Origin: Schmidtea nova
Taxonomy: Eukaryota
Direction of reading: 5' to 3'
Assembly: GCA_044892505.1 (NCBI GenBank)
Contig: CM097882.1
Coordinates: 419,926,001 to 419,990,000 of the forward strand
Length of the DNA: 64,000 nt
Below, piece by piece: positions 1 to 20,288 of this stretch. The notes beneath the pieces are model-generated. The model was not told the DNA's origin and searched no databases. It saw only the letters and a list, made by a program, of their open reading frames with translations. Within the stretch, counting starts at the first letter, position 1, and every line of letters starts with the position of its first letter. Position numbers and translations under genes: made by a program.

Positions 1-357
1 ATTTACGATAATGGAAGATTAATTATTAATGAATTATGTATTATAAACGTTAATAATATTTTTAGACCTAAATATTACATATATAATAAAGTTTGTAGTG
101 AGTGGTATGAGGAGGAAGATTACTTTTGTCCTACATGTATTATGAAAGATATTGAAGATACTAGTGCTATTTTCTATGTCATGGATATGGATAAACTTAT
201 TGCTTTGAAGAAATATTTTCCCACTTTGAGATTAATCAAATATAATTTAAAAGAAATTGATGCTGTTCCCGATAATATTTCCTGTCCATATCGAGATCAT
301 AATGTATGTGCCTATAAAGGATGTTTGGTCGGCGCTATTGATTATTTAAAAGAATAA
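1..357 (+). CDS. Small Cys/His-rich Polinton-associated protein, 5'-truncated by the window edge (paralog of 12060-12461)
   Basis: Frame 1 is open from base 1 (IYDNGRLIINELCIINVNNIFRPKYYIY...EEDYFCPTCIMKD...SCPYRDHNVCAYKGC) and aligns along its length with the 133-aa ORF at 12060. Confidence 0.85.
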   Translation: MYDNGRLIINELCIINVNNIFRPKYYIYNKVCSEWYEEEDYFCPTCIMKDIEDTSAIFYVMDMDKLIALKKYFPTLRLIKYNLKEIDAVPDNISCPYRDHNVCAYKGCLVGAIDYLKE

Positions 358-518
358 ATGTATTAAATATTATTGTCTTTTATTATTATTATTATTATTA
401 TTTCATGACAAATATTATTTTATAAAAGAGACAAAGAAATTACATCACAATAAATGTATTAATTATTATTATTTTATAAAAGAGATAAAGACATTACATC
501 AGAATAAATGTATTAATG

Positions 519-606
<88 letters not shown>

Positions 607-660
607 ATATTTCATGACTAATATCATTTTATAAAAGAGATAAAGACATTACATCAGAGG
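350..660. repeat. About three imperfect tandem copies of an AATAAATGTATT...ATAAAAGAGA(C/T)AAAGA(A/C)ATTACATCA unit with (TTA)n tracts
   Basis: The repeated blocks and ATT microsatellite can be read directly; the block starts at the AATAAA signal after the upstream ORF. Confidence 0.7.
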
Positions 661-787
661 TCATGAACTCGAATGTCTTTATCAATTCACTTAGAAACTA
701 TCATGACATTATGTGTCATACACACATATAAACACAAACCATAAAGAAAATATACATGTACACATATTTCTCTTCCCTAAAACGATT

Positions 788-832
788 TTCATTGGCTGGT
801 TAATAACCGTTGAAAATATCTCACTTATATAC
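788..832 (+). promoter_or_regulatory. Putative Pol II promoter (inverted CCAAT box plus TATA) of the unit-A leader/PolB transcript
   Basis: ATTGG at 791-795 and TATATA at 826-831, about 75 nt before ATG 904; the same layout recurs at 12716/12742 and 20292/20319. Confidence 0.55.
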
Positions 833-903
833 CCTATCTTTACATTCTTTCTTCACTTTTAAAAATCAAATTTTACGATTTCATTAAATTTAATTAAATC
901 GAT

Positions 904-1490
904 ATGATCAACAACATCAATAATATTTGCAAGAATGTCAACGCTATGGGTAATTCTATTTTCATTTTATTATATAATTTTTATATCATTTATTTATTTA
1001 CAGCGTCATTGACTCCTTCATCGTTGAATGGAATTGCGCCGAAGAATATAGTCTTAGGATTAAATGGTATTTATTTAATTTCTTAAATATATTTTTTATT
1101 TTAAATTGTAGAAATTAAACAAGTTAATTCTGATTTATTCAGACCAATTGATCAACGTGGACGAATTTTTCCCACGGATATTATTGGAGAAACCTCTAAT
1201 GGTATTTTATTGTTTTATTTTAAATATATTCGTTCAATTAAAATTATAGGAAATAAACAAACTACCTCAAATGCTCAACGTGGACGAATTTTTCCCGCGG
1301 ATATTGATGCAGAATCTACTATCGGTAATTTATTATTTATTATTATTATTAAATACTTTTAATTTACAAATTATTTTTAGAAATTATAGACAATGATGAT
1401 CATATGTTCTCAATGACAGAAAAGATTTCTCTGCCTGAATCCGCTGATGAAGATGATGATGATGACGATAATGCTTGGTCTAAATGTTAG
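904..1490 (+). CDS. Five-exon small leader gene of unit A (exons 904-949, 1004-1066, 1112-1201, 1250-1324, 1381-1490), all introns phase 1
   Basis: GT...AG introns of 54, 45, 48 and 56 nt. The joined frame is open (MINNINNICKNVNAMASLTPSS...QRGRIFPTDI...QRGRIFPADI...LPESADEDDDDDDNAWSKC*) and contains an internal QRGRIFPxDI duplication. Confidence 0.75.
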
Positions 1491-1966
1491 TTATTATGGT
1501 ATTTTTGTAAAGTTTTATGATATTTTCTAACAACATTTNNNNNNNNNNNNNNNNNNNNNNNNNNNNNNNNNNNNNNNNNNNNNNNNNNNNNNNNNNNNNN
1601 NNNNNNNNNNNNNNNNNNNNNNNNNNNNNNNNNNNNNNNNNNNNNNNNNNNNNNNNNNNNNNNNNNNNNNNNNNNNNNNNNNNNNNNNNNNNNNNNNNNN
1701 NNNNNNNNNNNNNNNNNNNNNNNNNNNNNNNNNNNNNNNNNNNNNNNNNNNNNNNNNNNNNNNNNNNNNNNNNNNNNNNNNNNNNNNNNNNNNNNNNNNN
1801 NNNNNNNNNNNNNNNNNNNNNNNNNNNNNNNNNNNNNNNNNNNNNNNNNNNNNNNNNNNNNNNNNNNNNNNNNNNNNNNNNNNNNNNNNNNNNNNNNNNN
1901 NNNNNNNNNNNNNNNNNNNNNNNNNNNNNNNNNNNNNNNNNNNNNNNNNNNNNNNNNNNNNNNNNN

Positions 1967-2360
1967 AACTAAATACTCATAATGATTTAAATTCAGAATT
2001 TAACTTGTATAAAAATCTCTTGGATTATACTGTTTATTTATTATTATTTAATGTTATATTATAAAAATGATAAATTGTTTCTCTTTAATTATAATAATAA
2101 TAATTTATATTATCTCACGACGAAATCAAGATAATATTAATATTATTATTATTATTTTTAAATATATATGTAGAATTTTACAATTTTATTAAACCAAATA
2201 CCCATAATGATTTAAATTCAGAATTTAACTTGTATAAAAATCTCTTGGATTAAACTGTTTATTTATTATTATTTAATGTTATATATAAAAATGATAAATT
2301 GTTTCTCTTTAATTATAATAATAACTTACATTATCTCACGATGAAATCGAGATAATGTTA
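1967..2360. repeat. Tandem duplication with a period of about 225 bp
   Basis: AA(C/T)AAATAC(T/C)CATAATGATTTAAATTCAGAATTTAACTTG...GAAATC(A/G)AGATAAT occurs at about 1967 and about 2192. Confidence 0.85.
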
Positions 2361-2437
2361 AAATATTTTTATTTTTTCGAATTTTAATAATTTTAAAATT
2401 TTTTCATACATTTTTTAATATTCTATTGTATATTAAG

Positions 2438-5400
2438 GCTCCTTATATTCAAATTACTGTAATATGTCTGGTAGACATAGTTTTCAATGTCATAAACTTA
2501 TGACAAATTATTATCGTCAAAAGTTTAATGGTATTGACTACTATGTATGCCCAAAATGTGAGACTGCACAAACCTTACCCTACCCTGATTTTTATTTTGA
2601 ACATCGTATTCATCTCAATCAATTTTCGAAATCAAAGAAACTAGTCTTTCAAAATTCTTTTAAGAAATCATCAAATAAAACTTCATCGAAACCTTGGTCT
2701 AATAATGTTTCTGTCGATAAATTGTCTTCGGTTAAAACCTCATCGAAACTTCCGACTAATCCTAAATTATTAAATAATTTATTAAATAATACTAATATTG
2801 AAATAATTAATAAGAAACGCCCTGCTGATAAAATTAAAACCTTAGCACATAAAAAATCTAAACCCGAGATTATTATTATTAGCGATGACGAAATTATTAT
2901 AAGCGACGATGAAATTATTAATCAAATAGGAGGCTCCATCAATATCGATGATGAGCCAGTCATTGAAAAAGATTTAAGAGGATCTCGACGATCATTAACT
3001 TTTAATGTCGAATCACACAATATTAATAAAATAGCTCTCACTGAAAAAATTACGGAACGGCTAAATACCGAAATAATTAAAATGGGGAATGTAAAACTCC
3101 AATTTGCCCTAAATATAGAATTCGAAAAAGACGGGGTTTACAAAAATGAATTTATTTCAACTAAAGCTGAAATATTTTCAGATGATTTATTAATAGAGCT
3201 GATTAGTAAATTAAATAATAAAGTAGAGAAATTCACACATATGGGTAGCGGTTGGACTGTAAATAAAATTAGGGAAATACATTTTATTTTAACAAAATAT
3301 TCACAGATTACTAGATTATCAGGACGCTGTTATTTTAAAACCCCTACACAATTATTAAATAAAAGGGCTATTATTAATGTCGAAAATAGTGATAATCTAT
3401 GTTTCGTATATAGTGTGTTGGCCATAACGAAATATAGTTCAATTAGTAGTAATCGATGTGCAACTTCGAGTTACACCTCTTTTTTAAATAGTTTAGTATT
3501 TAATCCTATAGACGACTGCCCCATGAAGTTATGCAACATCCCAAAATTTGAAAATAATAATCCTGGTTTGGCTATTAATGTACTTTCTTACAGCTCTAAA
3601 GTAAATAGAGATTTTAATGACGAGGAAGACCCTGATTATGTAACTCATCATCCCCACTTAGAAATTATACATAAGACCAAATTAACACATTTAAACCCTA
3701 TTTATCTGTTATTGTTAGAAAATGAGGGGGTTTACCACTACACTGCAGTCATTAATTTACAAAAATTAATGAACTGTCACAAAAATAGGATTGTTTCAGC
3801 TAGGATACAATCTTTATGATGTCCACAGTGTTTAAATGGTTTCCGTAAAAAGGAAACATTCGATACGCATTACAATTTATGTAAAAGAAATCAGATAGGT
3901 ACAACTCTTTTTAGTTTACCAAAAAATAAATTTTTAGAATTTAAAGATTTTTCGAAAACCGTAACCCCACCATTCGTAATATATGGAGACTTCGAGTCTA
4001 TTTTACCGATTGATGACAGGTATCACCAAAAGCATTTACCCATATCAGCAGGGTTGTTACTTATTAATAATTTTAATAATACAAAATCTTATTACCAATT
4101 TATAGGTCTTGAATGCGTAATTGACTTTCTTCGGAAAGTGGAGGAAATTGCTGTCACAATTGTCCTGCCCTATTACGACATTCATGGACATGCTCCATTA
4201 GGGACATTGTCCATTTCTGAGGAACTAAATTTCAGATCTTGCTCTCATTGTTATCTGTGTAAAAAACCTATTAGAAATAGAGTAAGAGATCACGACCACT
4301 TCACCGGCAGATATCTTGGCCCAGCTTGCAACATTTGTAATATTTCCCGTAGAATAAGGAAACATTTGCCTGTAATCTTTCATAATTTGAGAGGTTACGA
4401 CCTACATCACATTTTGAAGTACGGTCTGAAAAAATTTCCTTCTTGGGAATTACATATTATTCCTACCACTACAGAGAAATTTATTTCTCTGATTGCTCAC
4501 ATTAATAAACTGGCTGTTAGGTTTATTGATAGTTACCAATTTGTAACAGCGTCTTTGGATAAAGCAGTTAAAACTCTGTCAGTTTTGCCGCTAACATCGT
4601 CTGTTTTCATCGGTTCCATTATGGATTGTAAGGGTATTTTCCCTTTTAATTTTGCTACGAGTCTTGAGATTCTTCAATCAACTCTTGAATTGCCACCTAT
4701 TTGGGAGGAAGTAACTGAGACTCAATATTTAAAAGCTCAGCAAATCTGGCGCGAACAAAATTGTACAAATTTATTAGACTATATGATGGTCTACCTAAAA
4801 TTGGACGTATTTCTCCTCGCAGATTTTTTCCAGCAATTCCGAGCTATGTCCATTGATCACAATGGCTTAGATCCTTTGAATTTTTATGGAATTCCTGGTA
4901 TGTCATGGGCATCAGCGCTCATGACATTACAGGAACCTATAGAACTTCTACAGGATATGGAAATGTATAATTTCTATGAAGGAGGAATACGGGGTGGATT
5001 GACATTTGTCAATAAACATTATGTTCAAGCGTCAGATGATACTGAGCTTTTATATATAGATATTAATAATCTATATGGTTGGGCTCTTAGCCAAAATCTT
5101 CCTTTCGGTGACTTTAAGTGGGTATATGAAAATCTTGATGTAGTCTTGGCTGAGTGTATGTCGACGGAAATTGATGATCTTCCATATGGGTACACATTGG
5201 AAGTTGATATCGAAATTCCTGAAAACATACACGACTTTTTGGATGATTTCCCTATTGCTGCGGAAAAGAGGTGCCCACCATTGTCGAAGGTTGAGAAGTT
5301 GATGCTCACGCATTACGCAAAGTATAACGATGTTATACATTGGCGACTTCTGAAGATGTTTGTTTTTCTTGGGGCTAAGATTATAAAAATCCATAGGGCG

Positions 5401-6399
5401 ATTAGGTTCAAACAGTCGACTATCTTTAAAAATTATATCGATATTAATACTCAGTTACGAGTAAATTCGACTAGCGAGTTTGGCAGGAATTTCTTTAAGC
5501 TGAAAATCAACAGTATTTATGGTAAATCCGTAGAAAATCTGAAAAAACGGATGAATTTGAGATTATGTAACTCGGCTGAAAAACTGATTACATATTCATC
5601 AAAGCCGTCATTTAGAAAATCAATCAAAATTGATGATAATCTTATTGCGGCACATCTGAATAAAGATTTGATATGTTTAGATAGGCCTAGTTATATCGGT
5701 CAAACGATACTAGATCTATCTAAATTGCGGATGTATCAACTACAATATGTTGAATTGCAGAAATATAGAGATCTCTTTGATTGTACTATAAGTCTTGTTG
5801 CTGGCGACACTGACTCGTTCTTTCTTGAGGTTAAAAACTGTAAACTCGATACTCTTTTACCGGCTATGATATCTGATTGTCTTTTAGACACTTCAAACTA
5901 TGATCACAACCATCCTTTATATTCGTGACAGCTTGACTCTGTTATAGGTAAATTTAAGGACGAGAGTAAGGGTTGTAGATATAAGGAATGGGTTTTCTTG
6001 CGTCCTAAATGTTATAGTCTTCTTGGTGATGACGAATACAACAAAGCCAAAGGGATTAAACTTAAGGAAACTAGAATAAAGCATCAATCTTATATTGATT
6101 GCTATCTGAATGACTGTATCATCACTGTTCCGCAAACTCGTATAGGAACTAAAAATCATCAGCTTTATACTATTAAAAACACCAAAATAGCTCTAACCAA
6201 TAAGGACGATAAGCGGGAATGGGTGGGGAGAAATGCAAGTCTCGCATTTGGGCATTATCTAGGAGTCAATGCTAGAGCCAATGACGATAATATTCCACCG
6301 GATCAATTGCCCGATCAATTAACAAATCTAATAAATGAGCCTCATATCAGTGATCCTTATGATTTCGGTGAATGGGCGGATCCATTTGAAAGAGTTTAA
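2438..6399 (+). pseudogene. polB: Protein-primed family-B DNA polymerase (pPolB) of Polinton/adintovirus unit A, with two in-frame TGA codons (3817-3819, 5926-5928)
   Basis: Track ORFs 2464, 4054 and 5998 share one frame. Motifs: ExoI YGDFES, Endonuclease-VII-like CYLC...RDHDHFTG...CNICN, FHNLRGYD, YIDINNLYG, KLKINSIYGK, GDTDSFF, KFKDE, LRPKCYS. The frame is open back to an AG acceptor at 2436-2437. Confidence 0.95.
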
Positions 6400-7107
6400 T
6401 CAGGTAATTTAAATGTTTAGTAAATTTCATCCCATCATTCATTACATATTCAGAATATTTCAAGCAGAAAAACAAAATCATTCAATTTTATTTCAATCAA
6501 AACATCATCCAATTTCATCAGAACATCAAATTTTTCATCATAATCATCATCATCTTCAACGACTCACATCCTACAAAAATATTTTCTGTTTTTTGATTAT
6601 CTATTTTTCAATAAAATTTTTCGAAAATTTATTTTTCTATATTTTCTATTAAAAATTTTATGTTTAATGTTTGGATAATTTAGNNNNNNNNNNNNNNNNN
6701 NNNNNNNNNNNNNNNNNNNNNNNNNNNNNNNNNNNNNNNNNNNNNNNNNNNNNNNNNNNNNNNNNNNNNNNNNNNNNNNNNNNNNNNNNNNNNNNNNNNN
6801 NNNNNNNNNNNNNNNNNNNNNNNNNNNNNNNNNNNNNNNNNNNNNNNNNNNNNNNNNNNNNNNNNNNNNNNNNNNNNNNNNNNNNNNNNNNNNNNNNNNN
6901 NNNNNNNNNNNNNNNNNNNNNNNNNNNNNNNNNNNNNNNNNNNNNNNNNNNNNNNNNNNNNNNNNNNNNNNNNNNNNNNNNNNNNNNNNNNNNNNNNNNN
7001 NNNNNNNNNNNNNNNNNNNNNNNNNNNNNNNNNNNNNNNNNNNNNNNNNNNNNNNNNNNNNNNNNNNNNNNNNNNNNNNNNNTTAAGATATTGTCACAAT
7101 TTAAAAA

Positions 7108-7524
7108 ATGCCAGCACGTAAATCAGCTTATGATATCAGTGAAGAAAGAAAAATCAATAATGAAGTCAAACCGGTTCAAATGTATTACGATTACAAAATA
7201 TATTTCTTAGTACAAGAAATACCATTTCGTTTGTCGTATCCAGTGAAATTAACAAAGTCTTTGTATGACAATTTAGCTGCAAATTTAAGTAAAGAAGATG
7301 TTGTGGCACTAAATAAAGTTTTATTCAAAATCAATAACAATTTAAGTTGCAAGGAAACCATATGGATTAACAATCGAAAAACTCGTTTCCATGATGCTTT
7401 CCAATCAATCGAATACAAGGATCAAGAAAATTGGTTTATTACCATAATAATTCAGGGCTATAAAATCGATACAAAGGATGTTATAACTCCAATTTGGAGA
7501 ATTGACAGTGCACGATATGCATAA
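7108..7524 (+). CDS. Hypothetical 138-aa protein downstream of PolB-A
   Basis: Intact ATG-to-TAA ORF with protein-like composition, followed by AATAAA-like signals; no recognised family. Confidence 0.65.
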   Translation: MPARKSAYDISEERKINNEVKPVQMYYDYKIYFLVQEIPFRLSYPVKLTKSLYDNLAANLSKEDVVALNKVLFKINNNLSCKETIWINNRKTRFHDAFQSIEYKDQENWFITIIIQGYKIDTKDVITPIWRIDSARYA

Positions 7525-7799
7525 ATGTTATTTTATAAATGTTATTTAATAAATGTTAGTAATTTAAATTTTAGTTTTTGATTGTTCCATTTTTTATAAG
7601 ATNNNNNNNNNNNNNNNNNNNNNNNNNNNNNNNNNNNNNNNNNNNNNNNNNNNNNNNNNNNNNNNNNNNNNNNNNNNNNNNNNNNNNNNNNNNNNNNNNN
7701 NNNNNNNNNNNNNNNNNNNNNNNNNNNNNNNNNNNNNNNNNNNNNNNNNNNNNNNNNNNNNNNNNNNNNNNNNNNNATAGAATAATTTTAAAGTTTTTA

Positions 7800-8930
7800 T
7801 ATTTGACCTACATAATTGTGACATAGAAAATTATCTATTTGACCTACTTTTTTCTTACATAGAAAAATTATATTTCACCTACTTTGTTGACCTTAAAGTA
7901 TCCTTAAAGTACCCTTAATTCTGACTTTGAAAAATTTTGCAATTTATTATTAACCTATTTAATTTTACATAGAAAAAATTTAGAAATTATTATTGACTTA
8001 CTTAATTTGTCCTCGTCGTGACCTTAAATTGACCTACTTAATTCTGACATAGAAAAATTTTGAAAAAATAAAGTTGACCTACTTATTTATGACATAGAAA
8101 AAATTTTCGTGACCTACTTAATTCTGACATAGAAAAATTTTAAAAAAAATAAAGTTGACCTACTTTTTTCTGACATAGAAAAATTTTTGAAAAAATAAAG
8201 TTGACCTACTTTTTTCTGACATAGAAAAATTTTAAGAAAAATAAAGTTGACCTACTTTTTTCTGACATAGAAAAATTTTTGAAAAAATAAAGTTGACCTA
8301 CTTTTTTCTGACATAGAAAAATTTTTGAAAAAATAAAGTTGACCTACTTTTTTCTGACATAGAAAAATTTTTGAAAAAATAAAGTTGACCTACTTTTTTC
8401 TGACATAGAAAAATTTTTTAAATTATTATTGACCTACTTAATTCGTTGTCATAGCAACTATCAAATTTTGAAAAAATTAAGTTGACCTACTTATTCGTTG
8501 TCATAGCAACTTAGAAATAGTTGACCTACTTTTTTCTGACATAGAAAAAATTTGAAATTTATATTTGACCTATTTATTTTAACCTTAAATTCACCTTAAA
8601 AATATTTGACCTACTTAATTTGTCCTTATCGTGACCTTAAATTGGCATTCTTTTTGACCTTATAGTGTCCTTAAAACGACCTTGACCTACTTTTTTGTCC
8701 TCAAAGTGTCCTTAAACCATAAATTTGACCTTAAATTCACCTTAAAGTGTCCTTAAAACGACCTTGACCTACTTTTTTGACCTTAAAGTGTCCTCAAAGT
8801 GACCTTAAGCGAAAAATTTGACCTTAAAGTGTCCTTAAAGTGTCCTTAAGCAAAAAATTTGACCTTAAATTGACCTACATAAAATTTGACCTACATAAAA
8901 AAAAAATTTCTAGGGGGGGGGGTCTTGACC
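7800..8930. repeat. Tandem array with a 46-bp core unit (AAAGTTGACCTACTTTTTTCTGACATAGAAAAATTTTTGAAAAAAT) and degenerate flanks, ending in a G-run
   Basis: A 46-bp period is visible (TTGACCTAC at 8155, 8201, 8247); roughly 30 TGACCT hexamers by eye count. Confidence 0.95.
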
Positions 8931-8931
8931 T

Positions 8932-9969
8932 ATATCTGGCGGGCTCACTTCCTACTACTTTCTACTTAGCAACAGTTGTCCCGATATACATCCAGATAAT
9001 ACTTCCAGTAATTTCATGGTCAATCTTTAAAATCCAATGTATTTGGACGGGATTTGGGAAGTCGCTCTCTTAGACTTTACATTTGTGTATAATCCATTTC
9101 CATTTTACAGTAAATCAGAAATTCGGTACAAAAAGAAAACTATACATACAAAATATAAAAATTTGATTATCAACAATCAACTTTGTGAAGTTGATATATC
9201 TAATCCTGCCGATGATATTGCTCAAATGAGTAGCGATAGACATTCTATTTATTTTACCTGTGATAATTTTCCCTTCACTATAACTTTTGATACTTTGGCA
9301 ATGGCAAAAAGAATGGGATTAACGAAACAGAGTATTGTAAGTCCTACAGATACATACAAGATACCGTTACCGGCATATGGTATAGATGGTCCATTAACGG
9401 AAAAAATTAGAATAAAGATGGAGTACAAGGCTGATTCTGCATTTATACATACATTTGCCGATAATTTATACATATCGAAACTGGATGAAATGCAATCATA
9501 TTTTATTCTAAATTGTGCAAGTATTTTTAAATCGTTGGAGTTGGTAGATGATAGTTACTTCAAATTCAGTTTGAATGCAGATGTTAGCGAAATAACCTTT
9601 GACAATAATCTTGTAAAAACATTGGGATTATCGAAAGCAACATATGCTCAAGATGGAAGCTTCACTGTTGGAATATATAAACCGAAAATAATTAAACTTC
9701 ATCAGCAAATGTTCATTTACAGTAATATAGTCAATCCTATAATTGTTGGTGATTCATTAGTTCCCATGTTGAAATCTGTATGGATTGAAAAATATGAACA
9801 GGATGAGGTTGTTCAAATACAAGTTGAAAATCCAATGTATTTATCTGTTTCAACATCCTGTATAAACAATATAGAAATAAATATCCGAGATGATAGTGGT
9901 AATTTAATAAACTTTCCAAAAAATTCCAAAACTCATTTGACTCTACATTTTCGAAAACATCATGAGTAA
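8932..9969 (+). pseudogene. Polinton minor capsid protein (penton), with in-frame TAA at 9028-9030 and no ATG before the conserved N-terminus
   Basis: Reading upstream of ORF 9037 in frame gives YYFLLSNSCPDIHPDNTSSNFMVNL*NPMYLDGIWEVAL. The C-terminus MFIYSNIVNPIIVGDSLVPMLKSV...NIEINIRDDSGNLINF...LTLHFRK is typical of Polinton penton proteins. Confidence 0.85.
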
Positions 9970-10327
9970 TCCCGATATAATTTCATTGTACAGTAATAGT
10001 CAAACTGGTGGCGAATTACCGTATTTTATAGGTAAACAGTATGGATCAGGTTGGTTGAAAACTATTGGAAGATTTGCACTTCCACTACTTAAGCGACTCG
10101 GTAGTTTTGGAATGAAAACTGCTAAAGACGTTATAATGAAAGATCAGAAAATTTTGCCTACTTTGAAAACGAATACTATGTAGGCTGTATCCAAGGCGAT
10201 ACCGTCAATTTCAAATATGTTTTCCAAAAATGAACCGGAACCTGAACCAGTAGGACCAAGACGTAACAAGATTAGAAAACGTATAAACAAACGAATGAAA
10301 GGTCATGGAACTATATTTGAAGAATGA
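9962..10327 (+). pseudogene. Small basic Polinton core/virion protein (QxGG and QxGxG type), with in-frame TAG at 10181-10183
   Basis: YSNSQTGGELPYFIGKQYGSGWLKTIGRFALPLLK; the frame continues past the TAG through an Arg/Lys-rich tail to a TGA that overlaps the MCP ATG. Confidence 0.75.
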
Positions 10328-11544
10328 TTTGCGGTAAATCTGAATTATGTCTTTTTGATCGACCATCACCTCAAGCAGTTATTGAATATGGAGTGTTTGA
10401 AGATGTATTTCCAATGAATTCTATTACAGATAGTAGAAATGATGTTGAATTTTACATTAATGGATCGGCAACTGAATATTTGGATTTGAACGATACTTTA
10501 TTATCCGTTACTGTCAAGGTTCTAGATAAAGATAAAAATAAATTAGTTGATGCGAGTGATGTTGTGCCTAATAATTACCTGTTTCATACTCTTTTCAACG
10601 ATGCGATTCTTGGATTTAATAATATAAAAATCGAGGGTAGAAACAATACATATGCACACAAGGCCATAATCGAAACTGTTTTAAATTATACTAGCGATAC
10701 AAAAGAAACATGTCTTACTCCAATGGGATCAATTTCATCTGACGATAGGAAAAAGTGGATCAAGGGATCTAAACTTTTCAACATGTGTTCATCATTACAA
10801 CTCGATTTTATGGATCAACCTAAATACTTACTTCCCGGAGTTAATGTACATATTAGATTGAAGAGATCTGAATCTTCATTATCATTGAAATCTGCAGCTG
10901 GGAAACCAATAATCCAATTAGTAGACGCTAAATTAATGGTTCGAAGAGTTCGATGTGAATCTTCAGTTTTGGCCGGTCATCAAATTGGTTTAAATAGTAA
11001 ACATGCAATTTATCCATTAAAATCCAAAGAAATCGTATCGTTTGCAATCGGTAAAGGCGCATCGTCATTTTACAAGGAGCAAATATTTGGAGATAGAAGA
11101 ATGCCTAATTTCATTCTTGTGGCTTTTCAAACTGAAAATCAATATAATGGATCATATGCTGAATCTGCATCTACATTCAAACATTTCAATGTGACTTCAT
11201 TATCGTTATCGAAAAATACCGATTTTCGAGAAACTTATACTCAAGATTTTGAAAATGATAATTTTAGTGCCACATATATGCAAAGTCTTGTCAGAAATCT
11301 CGGATATTTGGATAAAAACTTGAATTGCGGTATAAGTCTGGATGAATTTAAAACTAAATATCCATTCTTTACATTTGTGCTCGCTCCCGATTTTGATTTG
11401 AATCAAAGTCAAATCCCTCAAAACGGAAATTTACGACTCGATATAAAGTTTGCAAAACCCATTGATGAACCGGTTCATGTAATTATATATGGAGTTTTTG
11501 AAAATGAAGTTCAAATTACTGCCAATCGAACAGTACTAGTTTGA
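10324..11544 (+). CDS. Polinton/adintovirus major capsid protein (double jelly-roll, hexon-like)
   Basis: Intact 406-aa ORF with CGKSELCLF, VEFYING...YLDLNDTLL, QPKYLLPGVNVHIRLKR and a C-terminal G.LRLDIKFAKP...VIIYGVFENEVQI, matching remembered Polinton MCP motifs; it lies between penton and protease. Confidence 0.9.
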   Translation: MICGKSELCLFDRPSPQAVIEYGVFEDVFPMNSITDSRNDVEFYINGSATEYLDLNDTLLSVTVKVLDKDKNKLVDASDVVPNNYLFHTLFNDAILGFNNIKIEGRNNTYAHKAIIETVLNYTSDTKETCLTPMGSISSDDRKKWIKGSKLFNMCSSLQLDFMDQPKYLLPGVNVHIRLKRSESSLSLKSAAGKPIIQLVDAKLMVRRVRCESSVLAGHQIGLNSKHAIYPLKSKEIVSFAIGKGASSFYKEQIFGDRRMPNFILVAFQTENQYNGSYAESASTFKHFNVTSLSLSKNTDFRETYTQDFENDNFSATYMQSLVRNLGYLDKNLNCGISLDEFKTKYPFFTFVLAPDFDLNQSQIPQNGNLRLDIKFAKPIDEPVHVIIYGVFENEVQITANRTVLV

Positions 11545-11649: not shown

Positions 11650-12027
11650 ATGGAGTAAGTTTTTTAATTGATTAATTATTTATTTTTAATTAGTTCTATT
11701 CAGGTATTACATCAAGGTAAAAAACTATTGGGAAATCAATTTATTGGAGTATTTCCGCTAGATAAAATACCTTATTTGAAAATGAATCAAGCCATCATTG
11801 TAAATACTCAGACATCTACGTTGGGTGGTGAACATTGGATTGCAGTTTACGTGAAACCAGATCGAATACATGTATTTGATCCCTTTGGGTATTATTATCC
11901 GAATTTACTTGTTCGAAAACTTCAAACTATCGGTAAACCTATTGTGTATAATAGAATTCGATATTAGCATCCCTTAACAATCACTTGTGGTGAACATTGC
12001 CTTGCATGGTTGAAATCAATGTTATAA
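11650..12027 (+). pseudogene. Adenain-like cysteine protease with a 39-nt intron (11655-11693) and in-frame TAG at 11965-11967
   Basis: ATG GA|GTAAGT...TTAG|T TCT gives MDSIQV. Motifs: FIGVFPLD, IVNT, GEHWIAV (His), VFDPFG (Asp), Y*HPLTITCGEHC (the stop replaces the conserved Gln before the catalytic Cys). Confidence 0.9.
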
Positions 12028-12059
12028 ACAATTTCTTTTAATAAATTTTATTTGAAAAA

Positions 12060-12461
12060 ATGTCTTGTTATTTTATCGATTTTTATGGATATAATGAATT
12101 GGGTGGAACAACAATTAAGGAATTATGTATTATGAATGTCAATAATATTTTCACACCCCAGTATTATATATACAGTGATTTATCTTTCTGGCCTGATCGT
12201 ATAGAATCGTTTGAAGGACAAGATTATTTTTGCCCAAAATGTATAATGGATGATATAACAGATAAAGGAGCTATTTTCTATGTTACAGATAATGAAAAGT
12301 TGCATGTTTTGAAGAAGTATTTCCCTAAATTAAGATTAATTAAATGTAATTTTAAAGAAGTTGAATATGTTCCAGAAAACATCTCATGTCCCTATAAAGA
12401 TCATTGTATGTGTGCCTATAAAGGGTGCTTGTCTGCTGTTGTAGATTATTTAAAACAATAA
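12060..12461 (+). CDS. Small Cys/His-rich Polinton-associated protein, 133 aa
   Basis: Intact ORF with YFIDFYGY, IKELCI, FCPKC and CPYKDHCMCAYKGC; paralog at 1-357. Confidence 0.85.
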   Translation: MSCYFIDFYGYNELGGTTIKELCIMNVNNIFTPQYYIYSDLSFWPDRIESFEGQDYFCPKCIMDDITDKGAIFYVTDNEKLHVLKKYFPKLRLIKCNFKEVEYVPENISCPYKDHCMCAYKGCLSAVVDYLKQ

Positions 12462-12594
12462 ATGTATTTTATTATTTTTTTATTAATTATTTTTATTAAT
12501 TTTTATTTTTTTATTATTATTAATATTAAATATTATTATTTTAATCACAAAGGCATGACCAGTGCGTGATAGATGCATGATAAAACATGTGATT

Positions 12595-12755: not shown

Positions 12756-12824
12756 TTGCATTATTTCGTCACTTTTTACTCACAAATTTTTAAAAAATAT
12801 ACTAAATTCAATCAATTATTCAAT

Positions 12825-13189
12825 ATGCAAAATATGAAATTAAACTTGGAACGAAGAGTCGCCGGAGGAATTAATAGTAAGATTTTTATTTTATTTTATT
12901 ATTATTATTAATTTCTTTTTTTTTCAAGCTATTAATATCGCAAATAATGTGGCAGGATCCTCAACAACTGGACTGAGAAATCAAAATGATTTAATTGGTA
13001 AAAATTATTACTATTTTATTTTAATTTTCTTTAATATTAATTTTGTAGTAAACAATTACCAAGATGTGGATATCGATGCCCCTCTTAATGATGATGTCAT
13101 GCTTAATGTTGATGTCCCGCTTAATGTTGATGCTCCGATTATTGAAGTCCCGATTTTCAATGGCCAGAGTTTTAAAAACTCTCGAAAAT
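12825..13189 (+). CDS. Multi-exon small leader gene of unit B (exons 12825-12876, 12929-12997, 13049-about 13189), phase-1 introns
   Basis: GT...AG introns of 52 and 51 nt. The joined frame is open (MQNMKLNLERRVAGGINTINIANNVAGSSTTG...VNNYQDVDIDAPLNDD...); it occupies the same position as the 904-1490 gene. The 3' end is uncertain. Confidence 0.65.
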
Positions 13190-14093
13190 GTAATTTTTTA
13201 TTCTTATTTTTTTATATGATGATAATAATAGTATTTTTGGTATTTTTAATTAATTCATATGGATATTTTTAATTAATTTATGAAAAAGAATTTATATTAT
13301 TATTATAAAATAAAGATGATTTTAATGATGAATTTAATAAATGATGAAGAAGAATATGACAAAGTATTGTTGCTGATGAAATGATTATGTTTATTTTTTG
13401 ATGAAATGACAAAGAAGATACATTTTGATGAAGAATATGACGAAATAATAATGAACTATTTTATTGATGAAATTAATAGCAGATGAAGAATATGACAAAA
13501 TAATGATGAATGGAATATTTGATGATCAAATGATAAAGAAGATGAATTCTGATGAAGAAATTTTTTATCATTATTAATGATGATGAAATTATTTTTTTTT
13601 ATTATGACGAATTAATGATGTTAATATTTTTTATAATGATATAATAATGATGAATTATTTTATATTAAATTTAATATTGAATCTACCTTTTATCATATTA
13701 AGTAATTGTTTAAAATATATTATTTAATATGTTAAAAGGTAGATTACTAAGATTAACAAGATGAATTTAGATGTTATATAATGATGATATTTTTTTTAAT
13801 GTCAACAAAAATAGGATAATATGACGAAAACTTTTATATTAATTTATATTTAACATATTAAGTAGTATATAATTCAAACAATTACTTAATATGTTAAAGG
13901 TAAATTAATAAATATGATATTAACAATGCGAATATTGACGAATTGGAATAAAAGTTTTTAAACTATTTTTAATAAAATATAATGATTATATTAGTATTTT
14001 TTTTAACAATTTATAATTATTTAACCATTTATAAATATTATTTAACCATTTATAATTTAACCATTTTATTTAAATTTTTTTTTTAACATTCAG

Positions 14094-17000
14094 GTTCAAT
14101 TTATTACAATTTTTGTAATAGTAGTTCCCATAGTGACTGTCATGTCATTATGAAAAATACTATTCATTTAAATATAATGGTGTCACCCACCTCCTCTGCC
14201 CTAATTGTAAAATTATTGAAACAACATCTTATAGGGAATTTTATATCTTTCATAGGTCACACCTTTCTCAATACATGACTTCGAAAAAATCTCTTTTTAA
14301 TAGCTTATATGCTAATTATATTTTTAATAATAATACCTTTAATCGAAATAATATTAACAACAACAACAACAACTATCATAATACAATTAATAAAAATATT
14401 CTAAATAATCTACAAAATAAGAATACAATTAATCAAAATAATAACCTAAATCAAAATAATAACCTAAATCAAAATAATAATCTACAAAATAATAATAATA
14501 TACAAAATAATCTAAATAATACATCTAATTTAAATAAACGTAAAAATACAACATTAATGGATTCAGTTCCTAAAAAACTTATAATAATCGACATCNNNNN
14601 NNNNNNNNNNNNNNNNNNNNNNNNNNNNNNNNNNNNNNNNNNNNNNNNNNNNNNNNNNNNNNNNNNNNNNNNNNNNNNNNNNNNNNNNNNNNNNNNNNNN
14701 NNNNNNNNNNNNNNNNNNNNNNNNNNNNNNNNNNNNNNNNNNNNNNNNNNNNNNNNNNNNNNNNNTGAAGATGATCATATTTATAATAAAAGTAGCAATA
14801 TAGATATTATATCTGCCATTGACGATGACTTAATCGTCGTCAATGATGATGAATTTAATGAAATGATAAATATTATAAATAATAATAATCAAATTGGTAT
14901 GGGTATTGTTGAAGTTACTTCCGACTTGAACGATACCCATTTTATTATAAAAATGGACGTTTCTAATTTATTATTAAAAACGGTCTCTGTGCCGGATATA
15001 TTGTTAGAGAAATTAAACTCATATATAATTAAATTAAAATCATGTAAAATACAATTTTGTCTCAAGGTAGAATTTGAGAAAGATGATCAATTACAATCTT
15101 TTGTAATCTCAAATTCTGCCAGAGAGTGGAGTGATACCTTTATTGAGGAAGGTATCACTAGTTTAAATGAGAAGATTGTCCAGATTAACGAAAAGGGGAG
15201 TAATTGGACAATCTCCAAAATCGAATATATTAGTTTTTTAGTTACAAAATTTTCAGAGATTAGTAGGTTGAGCGGCAGCAGTTATATCGAAACTCCTAAT
15301 ACATTAAAAAATTTAAGTTGCCTAGTTAATGTCAACAATAACGACACTTATTGCTTTCTATATAGTTTTTTAGCAATAGTTAAATATGATAGTATTGAAC
15401 GCCAATACCGGCATAGGGTTACTTCTTACGATCTTTCCCAACTGACTTTTGACCCGAATGACATGCCTATGAAATTAGTCAACATTAAGAAATTCGAGAG
15501 GCAAAACCCCGGCTACAGCATTAATGTCCTTACATATGACGAAAAGGCCCAAATAGATATAAGTGATAGCGATAATGATGATAATGTCGTTCTTAAACAC
15601 CCTTTTATAGACATAGTATATCGCAGTAAAGTAGTCGGGGCAATTCCAATAAATTTACTTCTCTTGGAGAAAAAAGATAATTTTCATTATCTCGCGATTA
15701 CCGATCTGAATCGCTTTTTGAATTGCCGAAATAGTACCATCACCCCAGTTAGGATTTGCAGCCAATGGTGCCCTCGTTGCTTGAATGGCTTTAGGAACGA
15801 CGAAGCCTTTAATCGTCATAAGGGTCTTTGTACCAAAAATCAGTTGGGTACCACACTCTACACATTACCCAAAAATAAATTTTTAGAGTTTACTGATTGG
15901 AAGAAAACAGTAACTCCTCCTTTCGTAATATATGCTGATTTCGAAGCAATATTACCCAAAGATATTATTCATCACCAAAAACATATTCCTATTGCTGCCG
16001 GTCTTCTTCTGATAAACAACTTTACTGGGGTCAGAATTTACAAGTCTTTTGTAGGATTAGACTGTGTTGACCAATTTCTAAATGAAATTGAGTCAATCAG
16101 TAGATATATAGTCACTCCCTATTATTTTAAGAATTATAAAAAGCGCATGACCATCACTGCGACTTAACAGCGAGAATTTGACAATAGCACTAATTGCTAT
16201 TTATGTAAAAAGCTTTTAAATACCCCTGTTAGGGATCATGACCATTTCACCGGTCTTTATATTGGAGCAGCCTGCTCAGAGTGCAACAAGTCCCGGCAAA
16301 TAAGACACTCTTTGCCTGTTATCTTTCATAACTTGAAGGGCTATGATTTGCACCATATCTTAAAATATGGTCTTTCAAAATACAACACTTGGAATATCAG
16401 TTGTATTCCCTTGACTAGTGAAAAGTTTTTAAGCCTTTTCGCTTATATAGACAGTCTTACTGTTAAATTTATTGACTCCTATCAATTTGTGAGTGAGTCC
16501 TTGAACAATGCCGAAAAAACCCTTAGTTCTTTACCATTAACTCAGTCAGAATTTCGTGGCACTATAGTGACTGCCAAGGGCATCTTTCCATACGACGCTG
16601 CCACTTCTTTAGAAGTATTTAAATCTACCTTGTGTTTACCACCTAAATGGAAAGATATAACTGCTGTCGAGTATGCTGCGGCCCATAAAATTTGGCAAGA
16701 AACCTCATGTACATCACTGTACGATTACATGATGGTTTATTTGAAACTAGATGTTTTTTTATTAGCTGACTACTTTCAGCAATTTCGAATAAAACCAATT
16801 AACCATAACAGGCTTGAGCCTTTAAGTTTTCTCGGAATTCCCGGCATGTCGTGGAGTTCCGCTTTATTAACTCTTGACTCTCCTATCAAGCTCCTCGCCG
16901 ATATAAAGATGTATAACTTTTTCGAGGGCGGTATTCGCGGCGGACTAACGTTTGTCAATAAACATTATGTCAAAACGAGCCCGGATACCGCACTATTATA

Positions 17001-18271
17001 TATTGACATTAATAATTTATATGGGTGGGCCTTAAGCCAACCCTTGCCATGTGGTAATTTTGAGTGGGTCACTGATGACCAATTATTAAATAATATCGTG
17101 TTGCAGTGCACATCGGAAAATCTCGATACACTTCATTATGGTTACACCATAGAAGTGGATTTGGAAATTCCGGCATCGATTCACGACAAACTGGATGATC
17201 TTCCAGTTGCCGCTGAAAAGATGTGTGCACCGGGATCCAAGGTTGAGAAGCTGTTGCTAACGCATCTTCCAAAGAAGAATTATGTTATTCATTGGCGGCT
17301 TCTGCAACTATTTATTAAAATTGGTGTGAAAGTAACGCACATACATCGCGCTATTAAATATAACCAAGAAAAAATCTTTTTTAATTACATAAATATAAAT
17401 ACCAGTTTACGAGCGGCTGCAACTAACAAGCTCGACAAAGATTTTTACAAATTATTAAATAATAGTCTCTACGGCAAAACCGTAGAGAACTTAAAAAAAC
17501 GTATTAATTTGCGACTGTGTAACTCAGCACAAAAACTGCTGACTTACACGTCGAAACCAAATTTTAAAAAAACAAACAAAATCGATAGTGATCTGATCTC
17601 TGTATTGCTTCAGAAGGAATCAGTATGTTTGGATAGACCCAGCTACATCGGACAAACCGTACTGGATTTATCCAAACTTCGTATGTACCAGCTGCAGTAT
17701 GAAGAGTTACAAAAATATCGTAACGACTTCAACTGCGAAATTAACATCGTTGCTGGGGATACTGATTCCTTCTTCTTGGAAATAAAAAATCTGCCTTTGG
17801 ACACTCTTTTAGCTGCCATGATTCGCGATAGGCTTTTGGACACCTCTAATTACGACACTCGTCATACATTGTATAGTAGGACCCTTGATTCTGTGATTGG
17901 TAAATTTAAGGATGAGAACAAGGGTCTACTGTATGATGAGTGGGTTTTCTTAAGACCTAAATGTTATAGCTTGATGGGAGACGAGGCCTGCATGAAAGCT
18001 AAGGGTATCTGTTTAAAAGATGCAGGTCTCACACATCAGTCTTATCTCGACTGTTTTCTTAATGACAAAATCTATAATGTCCCCCAGTTCCGCATTACGA
18101 GCAAAAACCACCAACTTTTTAGTATTAAAAGCAATAAGAGAGCCTTATCTTGTAGGGACGATAAGAGGAACTGGGTGGATAAAAATAAAAGTTTGGCGTA
18201 TGGCCATTATATGGGGGGTGACACCACTATATTTGTAGGTGATGATGGATCAGAACAGCAGCAGCAGCTTC

Positions 18272-18351
<80 letters not shown>

Positions 18352-18411
18352 GGTCCGGCAGATGACCCCTACGAGTTTTACGATCCGACTGCTCGAGACT
18401 ACTTCGGATAA
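14094..18411 (+). pseudogene. polB: pPolB of unit B, with a 1-nt frameshift at about 14157, in-frame TAA at 16165-16167 and a C-terminal polyQ
   Basis: Track ORFs 14275 and 16312 share one frame and carry the same motif set as PolB-A (YADFEA, RDHDHFTG, YIDINNLYG, KLLNNSLYGK, GDTDSFF, KFKDE). Homology to PolB-A extends up to an AG acceptor at 14092-14093. Confidence 0.95.
18271..18351 (+). repeat. (CAA)27 microsatellite encoding polyQ in the PolB-B tail
   Basis: Read directly; in frame with PolB-B. Confidence 0.95.
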
Positions 18412-19273
18412 TGATGATGTTGGCAAGGATGAGAATGATGATGAGAATGACATGGAAAAAAAAACCAAAAAAAAAAGATATAAAGAAAATCAAAAACCAA
18501 AAAGATATGAGAATGAACAATCGGCCCTCTTCAGGGCCACAAATTATGATTGTGTAAAATAAACAGTTTTAGAAATCATTAATAAAAACCGAAAACAGAA
18601 AACCGAAAAGAAAACGGAAAAGAAATAATGAAACAGAAACCTAATAGAAATAATTAGAATTAAAAAAACAGAAAAGAAAACAGAAAATGAAGCCGATTCA
18701 GATTGTGAAAGATATAACGGTCCTCTTTAGGGCTTATATATTTTGATTGTAATAAATTGCGCAAACAATTAAAACTACGGATTTATTAATTTTTTGTTAT
18801 GTGTTGCTTATTTTTTTTTAAATGGTTATTTTTTATTTCAAGTTTTTTATAAGTTTAGTNNNNNNNNNNNNNNNNNNNNNNNNNNNNNNNNNNNNNNNNN
18901 NNNNNNNNNNNNNNNNNNNNNNNNNNNNNNNNNNNNNNNNNNNNNNNNNNNNNNNNNNNNNNNNNNNNNNNNNNNNNNNNNNNNNNNNNNNNNNNNNNNN
19001 NNNNNNNNNNNNNNNNNNNNNNNNNNNNNNNNNNNNNNNNNNNNNNNNNNNNNNNNNNNNNNNNNNNNNNNNNNNNNNNNNNNNNNNNNNNNNNNNNNNN
19101 NNNNNNNNNNNNNNNNNNNNNNNNNNNNNNNNNNNNNNNNNNNNNNNNNNNNNNNNNNNNNNNNNNNNNNNNNNNNNNNNNNNNNNNNNNNNNNNNNNNN
19201 NNNNNNNNNNNNNNNNNNNNNNNNNNNNNNNNNNNNNNNNNNNNNNNNNNNNNNNNNNNNNNNNNNNNNNNNA

Positions 19274-19735
19274 GTTCTTTGTTTAGTTTGCACGTGGATT
19301 GCAAAGTCCTTGTTTAGTTTGCACGTGTGTTGCAATGTCTCTGTTTAACTTGCATACGTGTTGCAATGTCTTTGTTCATGTTGCACATGTATTGCAATGT
19401 CTTTGTTTAGTTTGCACGCGTGTTGCAAAGTTTTCGATGACTCATATTTGTGTTAAAAAAATTTGTGTTAAAAAAATTTGTGTTAAAAAAATTTGTGTTA
19501 AAAAAATTTGTGTTATAAAAATTTGTGTTAAAAAAATTTGTGTTAAAAAAATTTGTGTTAAAAAAATTTGTGTTAAAAAAATTTGTGTTAAAAAAATTTG
19601 TGTTAAAAAAATTTGTGTTAAAAAAATTTGTGTTAAAAAAATTTGTGTTAAAAAAAAAATTTGAAAAAAATTTTTGGCGCGAAAAAAATTTGAAAAAAAA
19701 GTATGAGTCATCGATGACTCATCGATGAGTCATCG
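19274..19735. repeat. Composite array: ~30-bp TGCACGTG/TTGCAATGTCTTTGTT units, about 14 copies of 15-bp TGTGTTAAAAAAATT, then three 11-bp ATGA(G/C)TCATCG units
   Basis: Read directly; it occupies the same position downstream of PolB as the 7800-8930 array. Confidence 0.95.
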
Positions 19736-19747
19736 AAAAAAATTCTA

Positions 19748-19779
19748 CCCCCCTTCTCCCCCCGGGGGGAGGGGGTCTT
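19748..19779. other. C-run/G-run palindrome at the end of the array
   Basis: Perfect 16-bp palindrome CTCCCCCCGGGGGGAG at 19756-19771, followed by GGGGTCTT. Confidence 0.8.
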
Positions 19780-20288
19780 TGTTCTCTTTTTTCCGCCCAC
19801 GCAATGAGTCATAATGTCTTTGTTCCCGGCTCCACACATCTACCTACTTCGAAGCACGGCGAAACCTGAAAGGAATAACATAATAATAAACAGTAATAAC
19901 AATACAGAACTTGCCACTCGACCGAGATGAGATAGCTGTGTGATGAGCGAACAAAAACAATCAGGCGAGAACAAGAGCTGTCAAAATATCAGCAATAAAG
20001 AAAGCACAATATATAATAAATTACCATTGAGTAATTGAAAACCACTGAGGCCTGAAACAGAAAAGCGATGAATAATAAAATCTGTCAATAGAATTACCAG
20101 AGCAAAACGAAATTGCTGAACGCAGCAAATGCGGGGGCGGATTTCTTGGATAATAAATAAAAAACTAAAATAACAATAAAACCAATTAATCATAAGCAAT
20201 GAGTAATTACCAAAACTCATCGGTTTAATGAAAGAAAAATAAACAATTAAAAAATAAACGAATGACAAATAGACAACCATACTGAATT

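What the first reader, a model, noticed from the sequence alone, without database searches (positions are those of the whole stretch)
1..19780. Head-to-tail array of diverged Polinton-like virus units with no visible integrase, ATPase or TIRs
Seen: one-strand order [Cys/His gene]-[spliced leader]-PolB-A-ORF138-[array]-penton-core-MCP-protease-[Cys/His gene]-[spliced leader]-PolB-B-[array]. The two PolBs and two Cys/His genes are clearly diverged relatives, not a recent duplication. No rve integrase, no Walker-A packaging ATPase and no AGTAGT-type TIR was found, and the masked stretches between the two Cys/His genes are each under about 450 nt. Established: canonical Polintons encode both enzymes and have TIRs. 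Inference: a minimal (~12 kb) integrase-less lineage that accumulates in tandem, for example by recombination into earlier copies or through a helper.
Basis: partly seen in the sequence, partly recalled or inferred. Interest (0 to 1): 0.8.

Follow-up and report, generated by a model that had tools for sequence, protein, structure and literature searches.

The report
Adjacent endogenous Maverick-Polinton virus copies
Two to three related but clearly different copies of a Maverick/Polinton-type virus-like element lie head to tail in an animal-type genome; each carries a few disabling mutations, and the visible sequence shows no packaging ATPase or integrase, though this cannot yet be called a property of the lineage.

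Summary
The gene content is real. There are two protein-primed DNA polymerase (pPolB) genes, a double jelly-roll capsid gene (structure-confirmed), a penton gene (its only structural matches below Foldseek E 0.01 are mavirus penton chains) and an adenain-like protease. All lie on one strand with a period of about 12 kb.

- The "Cys/His gene", "spliced leader" and "PolB" are one roughly 1300-1440-codon pPolB gene. Relatives encode it as a single protein.
- A conserved small gene (ORF133) was missed. Its copy, cut by the window start, marks a third unit.
- The genes carry five in-frame stops and perhaps one frameshift.

The two polymerases differ as much from each other as from database relatives (60-66% aa). 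Silent sites are saturated and pN/pS is about 0.26. They are therefore independent acquisitions, not a local duplication.

No integrase, P-loop ATPase or terminal inverted repeat occurs in any unmasked part of the window. However, only one unit is complete, and the inter-unit junction crosses two N runs. Tandem integration of such elements is already reported.

The best reading is ordinary tandem endogenous Maverick-Polintons, one lacking its end-proximal genes. A truly minimal lineage remains possible (about 0.2).

The parts
1..354 (+). 3' part of an ORF133-like gene (unit 0), cut by the window start
   Evidence: 62% aa over 120 residues to ORF133. 72% nt for 25-403 against 12114-12504. pN 0.20, pS 0.63.
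1539..1966 (.). N run 1, in the spacer between ORF133' and pPolB-A. Its right edge abuts a two-copy direct repeat of about 225 nt (1967-2402).
   Evidence: Continuity is not testable (non-coding). The ORF133-to-PolB order mirrors the uninterrupted order in the next unit.
2464..6399 (+). pPolB-A: one gene for an N-terminal Zn-ribbon, a TP/vOTU-like region with invariant Cys and His, a Zn (Endonuclease VII-like) motif, the exonuclease and the polymerase. It is broken by 2 in-frame stops with no frameshift.
   Evidence: Pfam DNA_pol_B_2 2e-28 and Endonuclease_7 5e-5. Single frame against 5 full-length relatives. Stop counts. Invariant Cys/His. Architecture as in PMC11161782.
6684..7082 (.). N run 2, downstream of pPolB-A, inside the inter-unit junction
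   Evidence: Flanks are non-coding, so continuity is not testable.
7108..7524 (+). ORF138, uninterrupted, function unknown. It sits alone on a 520-nt stretch between two N runs.
   Evidence: No match in Pfam, PHROGs or PDB sequences. No counterpart after pPolB-B.
7603..7776 (.). N run 3. Its right edge lies inside the tandem array.
7777..8900 (.). Small-repeat arrays (units of about 36-46 nt, and 138 nt higher order) upstream of the penton gene
   Evidence: TRF; self-blastn.
8929..9969 (+). Penton (minor capsid, jelly-roll) gene, broken by 1 in-frame stop. There is no ATG where relatives start.
   Evidence: 25 relatives of 336-356 aa. One frame against 9 relatives. Stop count. AF2 pLDDT 87.7; the six best PDB matches are mavirus penton chains, 3e-4 to 1.6e-3.
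9962..10183 (+).
   Evidence: No family match.
10324..11544 (+). [quoted passage not shown]
   Evidence: 149 relatives at 40-82% identity, about 405-416 aa. AF2 pLDDT 89.9. Foldseek PDB 5e-16 to DJR MCPs. BFVD top match is a Cotesia sesamiae bracovirus protein, 4.6e-26.
11668..12027 (+). Adenain/Ulp1-like cysteine protease, broken by 1 in-frame stop. Its 5' end has no ATG in the open segment.
   Evidence: Pfam Peptidase_C5 5.9e-6, 26.5 bits against cut-off 21.3. Frame reading.
12060..12461 (+). ORF133: small Cys-rich gene conserved between units; function unknown
   Evidence: No match in Pfam, PHROGs or PDB sequences.
14093..18411 (+). pPolB-B: same architecture as pPolB-A, with a long Asn-rich linker (holding N run 14596-14765) and a (CAA)27 poly-Gln tract near the C-terminus. 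It is broken by 1 in-frame stop, plus a probable frameshift or lost start at the extreme 5' end.
   Evidence: Pfam DNA_pol_B_2 6e-27. 46% identity and 1e-135 of the N-terminal piece to residues 74-529 of the 1256-aa relative P0169. One frame against relatives on both sides of the N run. Counts. TRF.
18860..19272 (.). N run 5, downstream of pPolB-B. Its right edge abuts a 31-nt array.
19276..19780 (.). Right-edge repeats: 31-nt x4.9 and 15-nt x14 arrays, a palindromic 11-mer cluster and a C6G6 palindrome. Beyond this point the composition and content change.
   Evidence: GC profile.

Best explanation
Region 1-19780 is a cluster of endogenous Maverick/Polinton-type (Polintoviricetes) virus-like elements in an animal genome. 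At least two distinct lineages sit side by side in the same orientation.

Each unit carries a replication module made of one long gene: Zn-ribbon, terminal-protein/vOTU-like region, exonuclease and protein-primed polymerase. The one unit seen whole also carries a morphogenesis module of penton, small ORF, DJR capsid protein and adenain-like maturation protease, plus a small conserved gene (ORF133).

Shown: the copies diverged while under purifying selection, that is as functioning elements, and arrived separately. Since arrival they have collected only a handful of nonsense mutations. As they stand they cannot make full-length polymerase, penton or protease. The visible sequence encodes neither a packaging ATPase nor an integrase.

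Inferred: a second element integrated next to, or into the end of, a resident one (tandem integration). Loss of sequence at the junction then removed the terminal repeats and the end-proximal genes (integrase, ATPase). Alternatively these lie upstream of the window or in unread sequence.
For: - Gene identities.
- One-gene polymerase: with the architecture described in PMC11161782.
- Independent origin: PolB core 66% aa and 65% nt; codon-position identity 0.69/0.81/0.39 against a random 0.28; pN 0.23, pS 0.89. A, B and database relatives are about equidistant, at 60-66%.
- Youth of the insertions: 5 in-frame stops, at most 1 frameshift in about 11 kb of coding sequence, and an intact MCP.
- Animal host: HROB, nuclear-receptor zf-C4, DUF4817/DDE_3 mariner. 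The closest named MCP comes from an insect bracovirus (that it derives from a Maverick carried by that bracovirus is my own knowledge, not tested here).
- Tandem integration of polintons/PLVs, small repeat arrays and 'accretion and deletion' are already described.
- The literature read here describes MCP, mCP and an A32-like ATPase as the shared morphogenic module of these groups, so absence is more economically a loss than an ancestral state.
Against: - No remnant of an integrase or ATPase gene is detectable in the 2.6-kb junction or the 1.6-2.1-kb spacers. The deletion must therefore have been clean, or the genes never lay there.
- No terminal repeats or target-site duplications were found that would define the unit ends.
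- The ORF133 pair is less diverged at silent sites (pS 0.63) than the PolB pair (pS 0.89). This hints at mosaicism rather than two simple whole-element insertions.
- Only one unit is complete.
Confidence: 0.65

Rival explanations
1. This is a genuinely minimal (about 12 kb) Polinton lineage that has capsid genes and pPolB but no integrase and no packaging ATPase. It depends on helper elements or host repair and accumulates head to tail.
For: - The whole unmasked window lacks rve, tyrosine recombinase, A32/FtsK ATPase and any Walker A motif.
- The other genes of the complete unit are nearly intact, so erosion cannot explain the absence.
- The written N runs are each under 430 nt.
- Several relatives sit on contigs of 12.0-12.9 kb. 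This is suggestive only.
Against: - The sample is one complete unit.
- The junction and both edges are masked or repetitive.
- Many relatives sit on contigs of 15-32 kb, and several of those contig lengths recur in both the MCP and the PolB hit lists.
- The literature read here describes an A32-like ATPase as part of the shared morphogenic module.
- N-run lengths are only estimates.
Confidence: 0.2
2. Scaffolding artefact. The units are joined only through assembly gaps, so they may not be adjacent. Unread sequence of unknown length may hold element ends, host DNA or the missing genes.
For: - The only inter-unit junction crosses two N runs (6684-7082 and 7603-7776), with a 520-nt island between them.
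- Three N runs abut tandem arrays, where assemblers typically break.
- The N-run lengths are irregular, as estimated gap sizes are.
Against: - Across N run 14596-14765 the order and frame are preserved.
- The ORF133-to-PolB order across N run 1 mirrors the uninterrupted order in the next unit.
- All pieces share one strand and a regular period.
Confidence: 0.15
3. One composite viral genome was acquired as a unit. It would be a 'tandem mosaic' genome with two replication modules, as seen on some metagenomic contigs, rather than two separate insertions.
For: - Tandem mosaic copies at 70-78% nt identity on single environmental contigs, and elements with a second replicase, are reported.
- The ORF133 pair and the PolB pair show different silent-site divergence.
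Against: - The region would exceed 20 kb and would duplicate the same type of polymerase, with no evident gain.
- No shared ends were found.
Confidence: 0.1
4. Tandem duplication in place, followed by neutral decay.
For: Direct order and a regular period of about 12 kb.
Against: - Silent sites are saturated while amino-acid identity is 66% (pN/pS about 0.26), and the reading frames are almost intact.
- The two copies are no closer to each other than to relatives from other samples.
Confidence: 0.02

Closest known systems
Group 1 Maverick-Polintons of animal genomes (class Polintoviricetes). The closest named capsid match is an uncharacterized protein of Cotesia sesamiae bracovirus; that it belongs to a Maverick carried by that bracovirus is my own knowledge.
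   Same: - A pPolB with an N-terminal TP/vOTU-like region.
- DJR MCP, penton and adenain-like protease.
- Integrated in an animal genome.
-.
   Different: - No rve integrase, no A32-like ATPase and no TIR in the visible sequence.
- The unit is about 12 kb rather than 15-20 kb.
- MCP identity to the named relative is only 24%.
Tandemly integrated polintons/PLVs with small repeat arrays (anemone genomes and metagenomic contigs; bioRxiv 10.64898/2026.10.13.758929)
   Same: - Head-to-tail diverged units at 65-78% nt identity.
- Small repeat arrays between modules.
- A proposed cycle of accretion and deletion.
-.
   Different: Here both units carry the same class of replicase (pPolB). The complete unit lacks the ATPase, which those genomes retain as far as the text says.
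Adintoviruses / MELD viruses
   Same: The same fold family of capsid proteins appears among the BFVD matches, together with pPolB and an adenain-like protease.
   Different: Those are described with an integrase and a packaging ATPase, and as candidate exogenous viruses. Here the copies are endogenous and broken.
Mavirus-type virophages
   Same: Penton fold (mavirus penton gives the only PDB matches below Foldseek E 0.01), DJR MCP fold and a cysteine protease.
   Different: Per PMC11161782, the mavirus pPolB lacks the exonuclease domain. Mavirus also has an rve integrase and an ATPase, and its host is a protist with a giant virus.

Membership tests
Maverick/Polinton (Polintoviricetes) | [quoted passage not shown] | tested here: met
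   - DNA_pol_B_2 at 2e-28 and 6e-27.
- The N-terminal piece is contiguous with the polymerase in single-protein relatives.
- Invariant Cys and His.
Maverick/Polinton (Polintoviricetes) | Retrovirus-like (rve) integrase | tested here: not met
   No rve or any recombinase family in 371 stop-to-stop segments covering both strands of the unmasked window. The N runs and upstream sequence were not examined.
Maverick/Polinton (Polintoviricetes) | FtsK/A32-like genome-packaging ATPase | tested here: not met
   No Walker A motif in any frame of 1-20000. No ATPase family in the Pfam scans.
Maverick/Polinton (Polintoviricetes) | [quoted passage not shown] | tested here: met
   pLDDT 89.9. Foldseek 5e-16 to solved DJR MCPs. 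BFVD 4.6e-26.
Maverick/Polinton (Polintoviricetes) | Single jelly-roll penton (minor capsid) protein | tested here: met
   pLDDT 87.7. The six top PDB matches are mavirus penton chains (3e-4 to 1.6e-3, probability 0.92-1.0). Global TM is only about 0.3, so support is moderate.
Maverick/Polinton (Polintoviricetes) | Adenain/Ulp1-like cysteine protease | tested here: met
   Peptidase_C5, 26.5 bits against the gathering cut-off of 21.3, partial match. The gene carries one in-frame stop.
Maverick/Polinton (Polintoviricetes) | Terminal inverted repeats and target-site duplication | tested here: inconclusive
   No inverted repeat between any pair of candidate end regions in unmasked DNA. N runs lie at or next to every candidate end.
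Polinton-like viruses in the narrow sense (PLVs/Aquintoviruses) | MCP + mCP + A32-like ATPase; usually no pPolB or rve, with helicase-polymerase fusions and a tyrosine recombinase instead | tested here: not met
   pPolB is present, the ATPase is absent and there is no tyrosine recombinase. The closest named MCP match is from an insect bracovirus, which by my own knowledge points to an animal Maverick. Definition.
Capsid-less pPolB linear plasmids | pPolB without capsid genes | tested here: not met
   MCP and penton genes are present.

The most novel reading that the evidence does not exclude
This would be a capsid-encoding, self-priming Maverick-type lineage of about 12 kb that has dispensed with both the packaging ATPase and the integrase. 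It would persist as a satellite of full-length elements, or through host repair, and would build head-to-tail arrays of diverged members at preferred sites.
Probability: 0.18. Interest if true: 0.7.

Novelty: new member of a known kind. Interest (0 to 1): 0.35.

Why it matters
If the absence of ATPase and integrase were a lineage trait, it would break the rule that the DJR-capsid viruses of this assemblage carry an A32/FtsK packaging ATPase. It would also point to helper-dependent, satellite-like Mavericks in animals.

As the evidence stands, the value is more modest:
- It is a clean example, in an animal genome, of tandem integration of distinct Maverick lineages that were selected as functioning elements up to insertion.
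- It corrects a gene model: the N-terminal Cys/His protein is part of the polymerase polyprotein.
- It adds a small conserved gene (ORF133) of unknown role.

Tried and rejected
- Alternative genetic code or programmed readthrough as the cause of the in-frame stops: rejected. All three stop codons occur among them, and long stretches are free of any stop.
- Introns as the cause: rejected. Alignments to the sister copy and to relatives run through the stops without extra sequence.
- In-place duplication: rejected.
- Conserved coding sequence in the ORF133-to-PolB spacers or after the polymerases: none.
- Rfam and tRNA scans of the window: nothing.
- PDB sequence searches with MCP, penton, the polymerase N-terminal piece, ORF138, ORF133 and a profile of full-length polymerases: no informative hit. 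The only signal was a weak Zn-motif match to Hpy99I.
- PHROGs: nothing.
- Cluster look-up for names or hosts of relatives: no names.

Not done:
- The large representative-protein search, because of its cost and because it carries no names or context.
- A joined polymerase model. The pieces were searched apart, by reference.
- Any look-up of the letters under the N runs.


Full report
**The window and its gaps**

The window is 64 kb at about 29% G+C and has nine N runs, five of them inside the finding.

I tested the N runs first.
- N run 14596-14765 lies inside the second polymerase gene. Full-length relatives (P0169, P0165) align to both flanks in order and in one frame, and the sister copy does the same. 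Continuity and frame are therefore supported. The run falls in a lineage-specific Asn-rich linker, not in a conserved domain.
- The other four runs lie in non-coding DNA, where frame cannot be tested.
- Three of them end exactly where a tandem array begins, at 1967, 7777 and 19273. This is typical of breaks at repeats.
- I did not look up or infer the masked letters.

**Gene content**

- Pfam finds DNA_pol_B_2 twice (2e-28 and 6e-27). Each hit is accompanied by an Endonuclease VII-like zinc motif.
- Pfam finds Peptidase_C5 once, at 26.5 bits against a cut-off of 21.3.
- The 406-aa ORF has 149 relatives of the same length at 40-82% identity. With their alignment it folds at pLDDT 89.9. The model matches solved double jelly-roll capsid proteins: iridovirus at 5e-16, then PBCV-1, Sputnik and mavirus.
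- In the viral structure library the best match is an uncharacterized protein of Cotesia sesamiae bracovirus (4.6e-26, 24% identity). Adomavirus, MELD-virus and adintovirus proteins follow.
- The ORF upstream of the capsid gene has 25 relatives and folds at pLDDT 87.7. Its six best solved matches are all mavirus penton chains, at 3e-4 to 1.6e-3, with a low global TM.

**The polymerase gene model**

- All pieces lie in one reading frame.
- Relatives encode the whole as single proteins of 1150-1300 aa.
- The N-terminal piece of copy B aligns to residues 74-529 of the 1256-aa relative P0169, at 46% identity and 1e-135.
- Alignments to relatives and to the sister copy run straight through the interruptions. 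The interruptions are therefore point nonsense codons, not introns.
- A Cys and a His are invariant across 31 sequences in the N-terminal region.
- This fits the terminal-protein plus vOTU plus exonuclease plus palm architecture described for polinton pPolBs in PMC11161782.
- The OTU fold itself was not tested here.
- I searched the pieces apart, by reference, and built no joined model.

**Breaks (counts only)**

| Gene | Breaks |
|---|---|
| pPolB-A | 2 in-frame stops |
| pPolB-B | 1 in-frame stop, plus a probable frameshift or lost start at its extreme 5' end |
| Penton | 1 in-frame stop; no ATG where relatives start |
| Protease | 1 in-frame stop; no ATG in its open 5' segment |
| MCP, ORF133, ORF138, 73-aa ORF | uninterrupted |

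**Repeat structure**

- Self-comparison shows 3880-6258 matching 15829-18210 at 65% nt and 25-403 matching 12114-12504 at 72% nt. The period is about 12.0-12.1 kb.
- The second pair is ORF133 and a copy of it cut by the window start (62% aa). The window therefore shows the end of unit 0, one complete unit and the polymerase of a further one. An equivalent reading is two units that each end with their polymerase.
- The spacers between ORF133 and the polymerase, and the regions after the polymerases, share nothing detectable.

**Divergence**

- The polymerase cores are 66% identical in protein and 65% in DNA. Codon-position identities are 0.69, 0.81 and 0.39 (random expectation 0.28). pN is 0.23 and pS is 0.89.
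- The N-terminal region is 39-41% identical.
- Copies A and B are no closer to each other than to relatives from other samples, at 60-66%.
- The two copies therefore diverged as selected, functioning elements and entered the locus separately.
- The few nonsense codons suggest that little time has passed since insertion. This last point is inference.
- The ORF133 pair has a lower pS (0.63) than the polymerase pair, which hints at mosaic histories.

**Missing genes and ends**

- I scanned every stop-to-stop segment of 35 aa or more in 1-20000, and of 50 aa or more in the rest of the window, on both strands. That is 371 segments against Pfam.
- Nothing matched rve, a tyrosine recombinase, FtsK, A32 or any other ATPase family.
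- No Walker A motif exists in any frame of the element.
- No inverted repeat links any pair of candidate end regions.
- It does not hold as a statement about the lineage. Only one unit is complete. The inter-unit junction (6400-9036) contains two N runs around a 520-nt island that carries ORF138. The right edge contains another N run, and the upstream sequence is unseen.

**Host**

The rest of the window carries HROB exons, a nuclear-receptor zinc finger, a protein kinase, mariner-type transposase remnants, a reverse transcriptase with gag and protease, and a primase exon. This is an animal genome.

The literature places pPolB, protease and rve 'group 1' Maverick-Polintons almost always in animal genomes. 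For that reason I treated the element as a virus-like element of an animal. I did not fetch contigs of its relatives, by look-up, pattern or accession.

**Comparison with what is known**

- Tandem integration of polintons and PLVs is already reported, including in anemone genomes. So are small repeat arrays and a cycle of 'accretion and deletion' that reshuffles modules (10.64898/2026.10.13.758929).
- The papers read here describe MCP, mCP and an A32-like ATPase as the shared morphogenic module of these groups (10.64898/2026.06.19.733378).
- The most economical reading is therefore ordinary tandem endogenous Maverick-Polintons, with the end-proximal genes and repeats of the complete unit lost at the junction or lying in unread sequence.
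- A truly minimal, helper-dependent lineage is not excluded. I give it about 0.2.

Some outputs and inputs show bounds of open segments from which the places of in-frame stops can be inferred:
- the outputs of my scripts;
- the reference lists I passed, and single references in other calls;
- my first notebook entry.

From then on I generally printed counts and outer bounds only, but again printed HSP bounds. This report gives none of those places.

Noticed in passing
window 34378-36025 (flanks 34191-36684): A satellite-like tandem array of a 79-nt unit, about 21 copies at 97% identity, with related diverged copies on both sides.
   Followed up: partly
window 22178-22498 (+) and 26411-26953 (-): Two diverged paralogous ORFs (about 39% aa) in inverted orientation flank an intron-less protein kinase gene (25156-26103). 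Neither ORF matches a family. Together they could be the arms of another mobile element.
   Followed up: partly
window 42058-43304 (+): A mariner-type transposase remnant (DUF4817 HTH plus DDE_3) split over two overlapping frames. A second Transposase_1 match lies somewhere in 43-64 kb.
   Followed up: partly
window 52756-54938 (+) and downstream: A retrotransposon remnant: gag with a CCHC knuckle, an aspartic protease (RVP_2) and reverse transcriptase. It is degraded further on, and no rve integrase is detectable.
   Followed up: partly
window 33754-34251 (-) and nearby: HROB (homologous recombination OB-fold protein) exons (1.3e-9). A nuclear-receptor zf-C4 match and a DNA primase small-subunit exon occur elsewhere in the window. 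These host genes mark the genome as animal.
   Followed up: partly
window 1-354 against 12102-12458, compared with the polymerase pair: The ORF133 pair is less diverged at silent sites (pS 0.63, third-position identity 0.55) than the adjacent polymerase pair (pS 0.89, 0.39). Modules of one unit may have different histories.
   Followed up: partly
window 13689-13736 / 13849-13898: A local 50-nt inverted repeat (88%) lies 200-400 nt upstream of pPolB-B. It has no counterpart upstream of pPolB-A.
   Followed up: no
window 19436-19446 and 19702-19734; 19750-19775: Inverted copies of an 11-mer bracket the 15-nt x14 array: 6 matches against 0.64 expected, all of them here. They are followed by a C-run/G-run palindrome at the edge of the element region.
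   Followed up: partly
window 18271-18351 and 14300-14600: A perfect (CAA)27 poly-Gln tract sits near the C-terminus of pPolB-B, and a long Asn-rich linker near its N-terminus. Both are absent from copy A and from relatives. This is host-like low-complexity growth inside a viral gene.
   Followed up: no
window 1063-1374: Degenerate direct repeats of about 135 nt lie in the spacer between ORF133' and pPolB-A. Each has a GC-richer core flanked by AT-rich DNA. No family match and no counterpart in the other unit.
   Followed up: no
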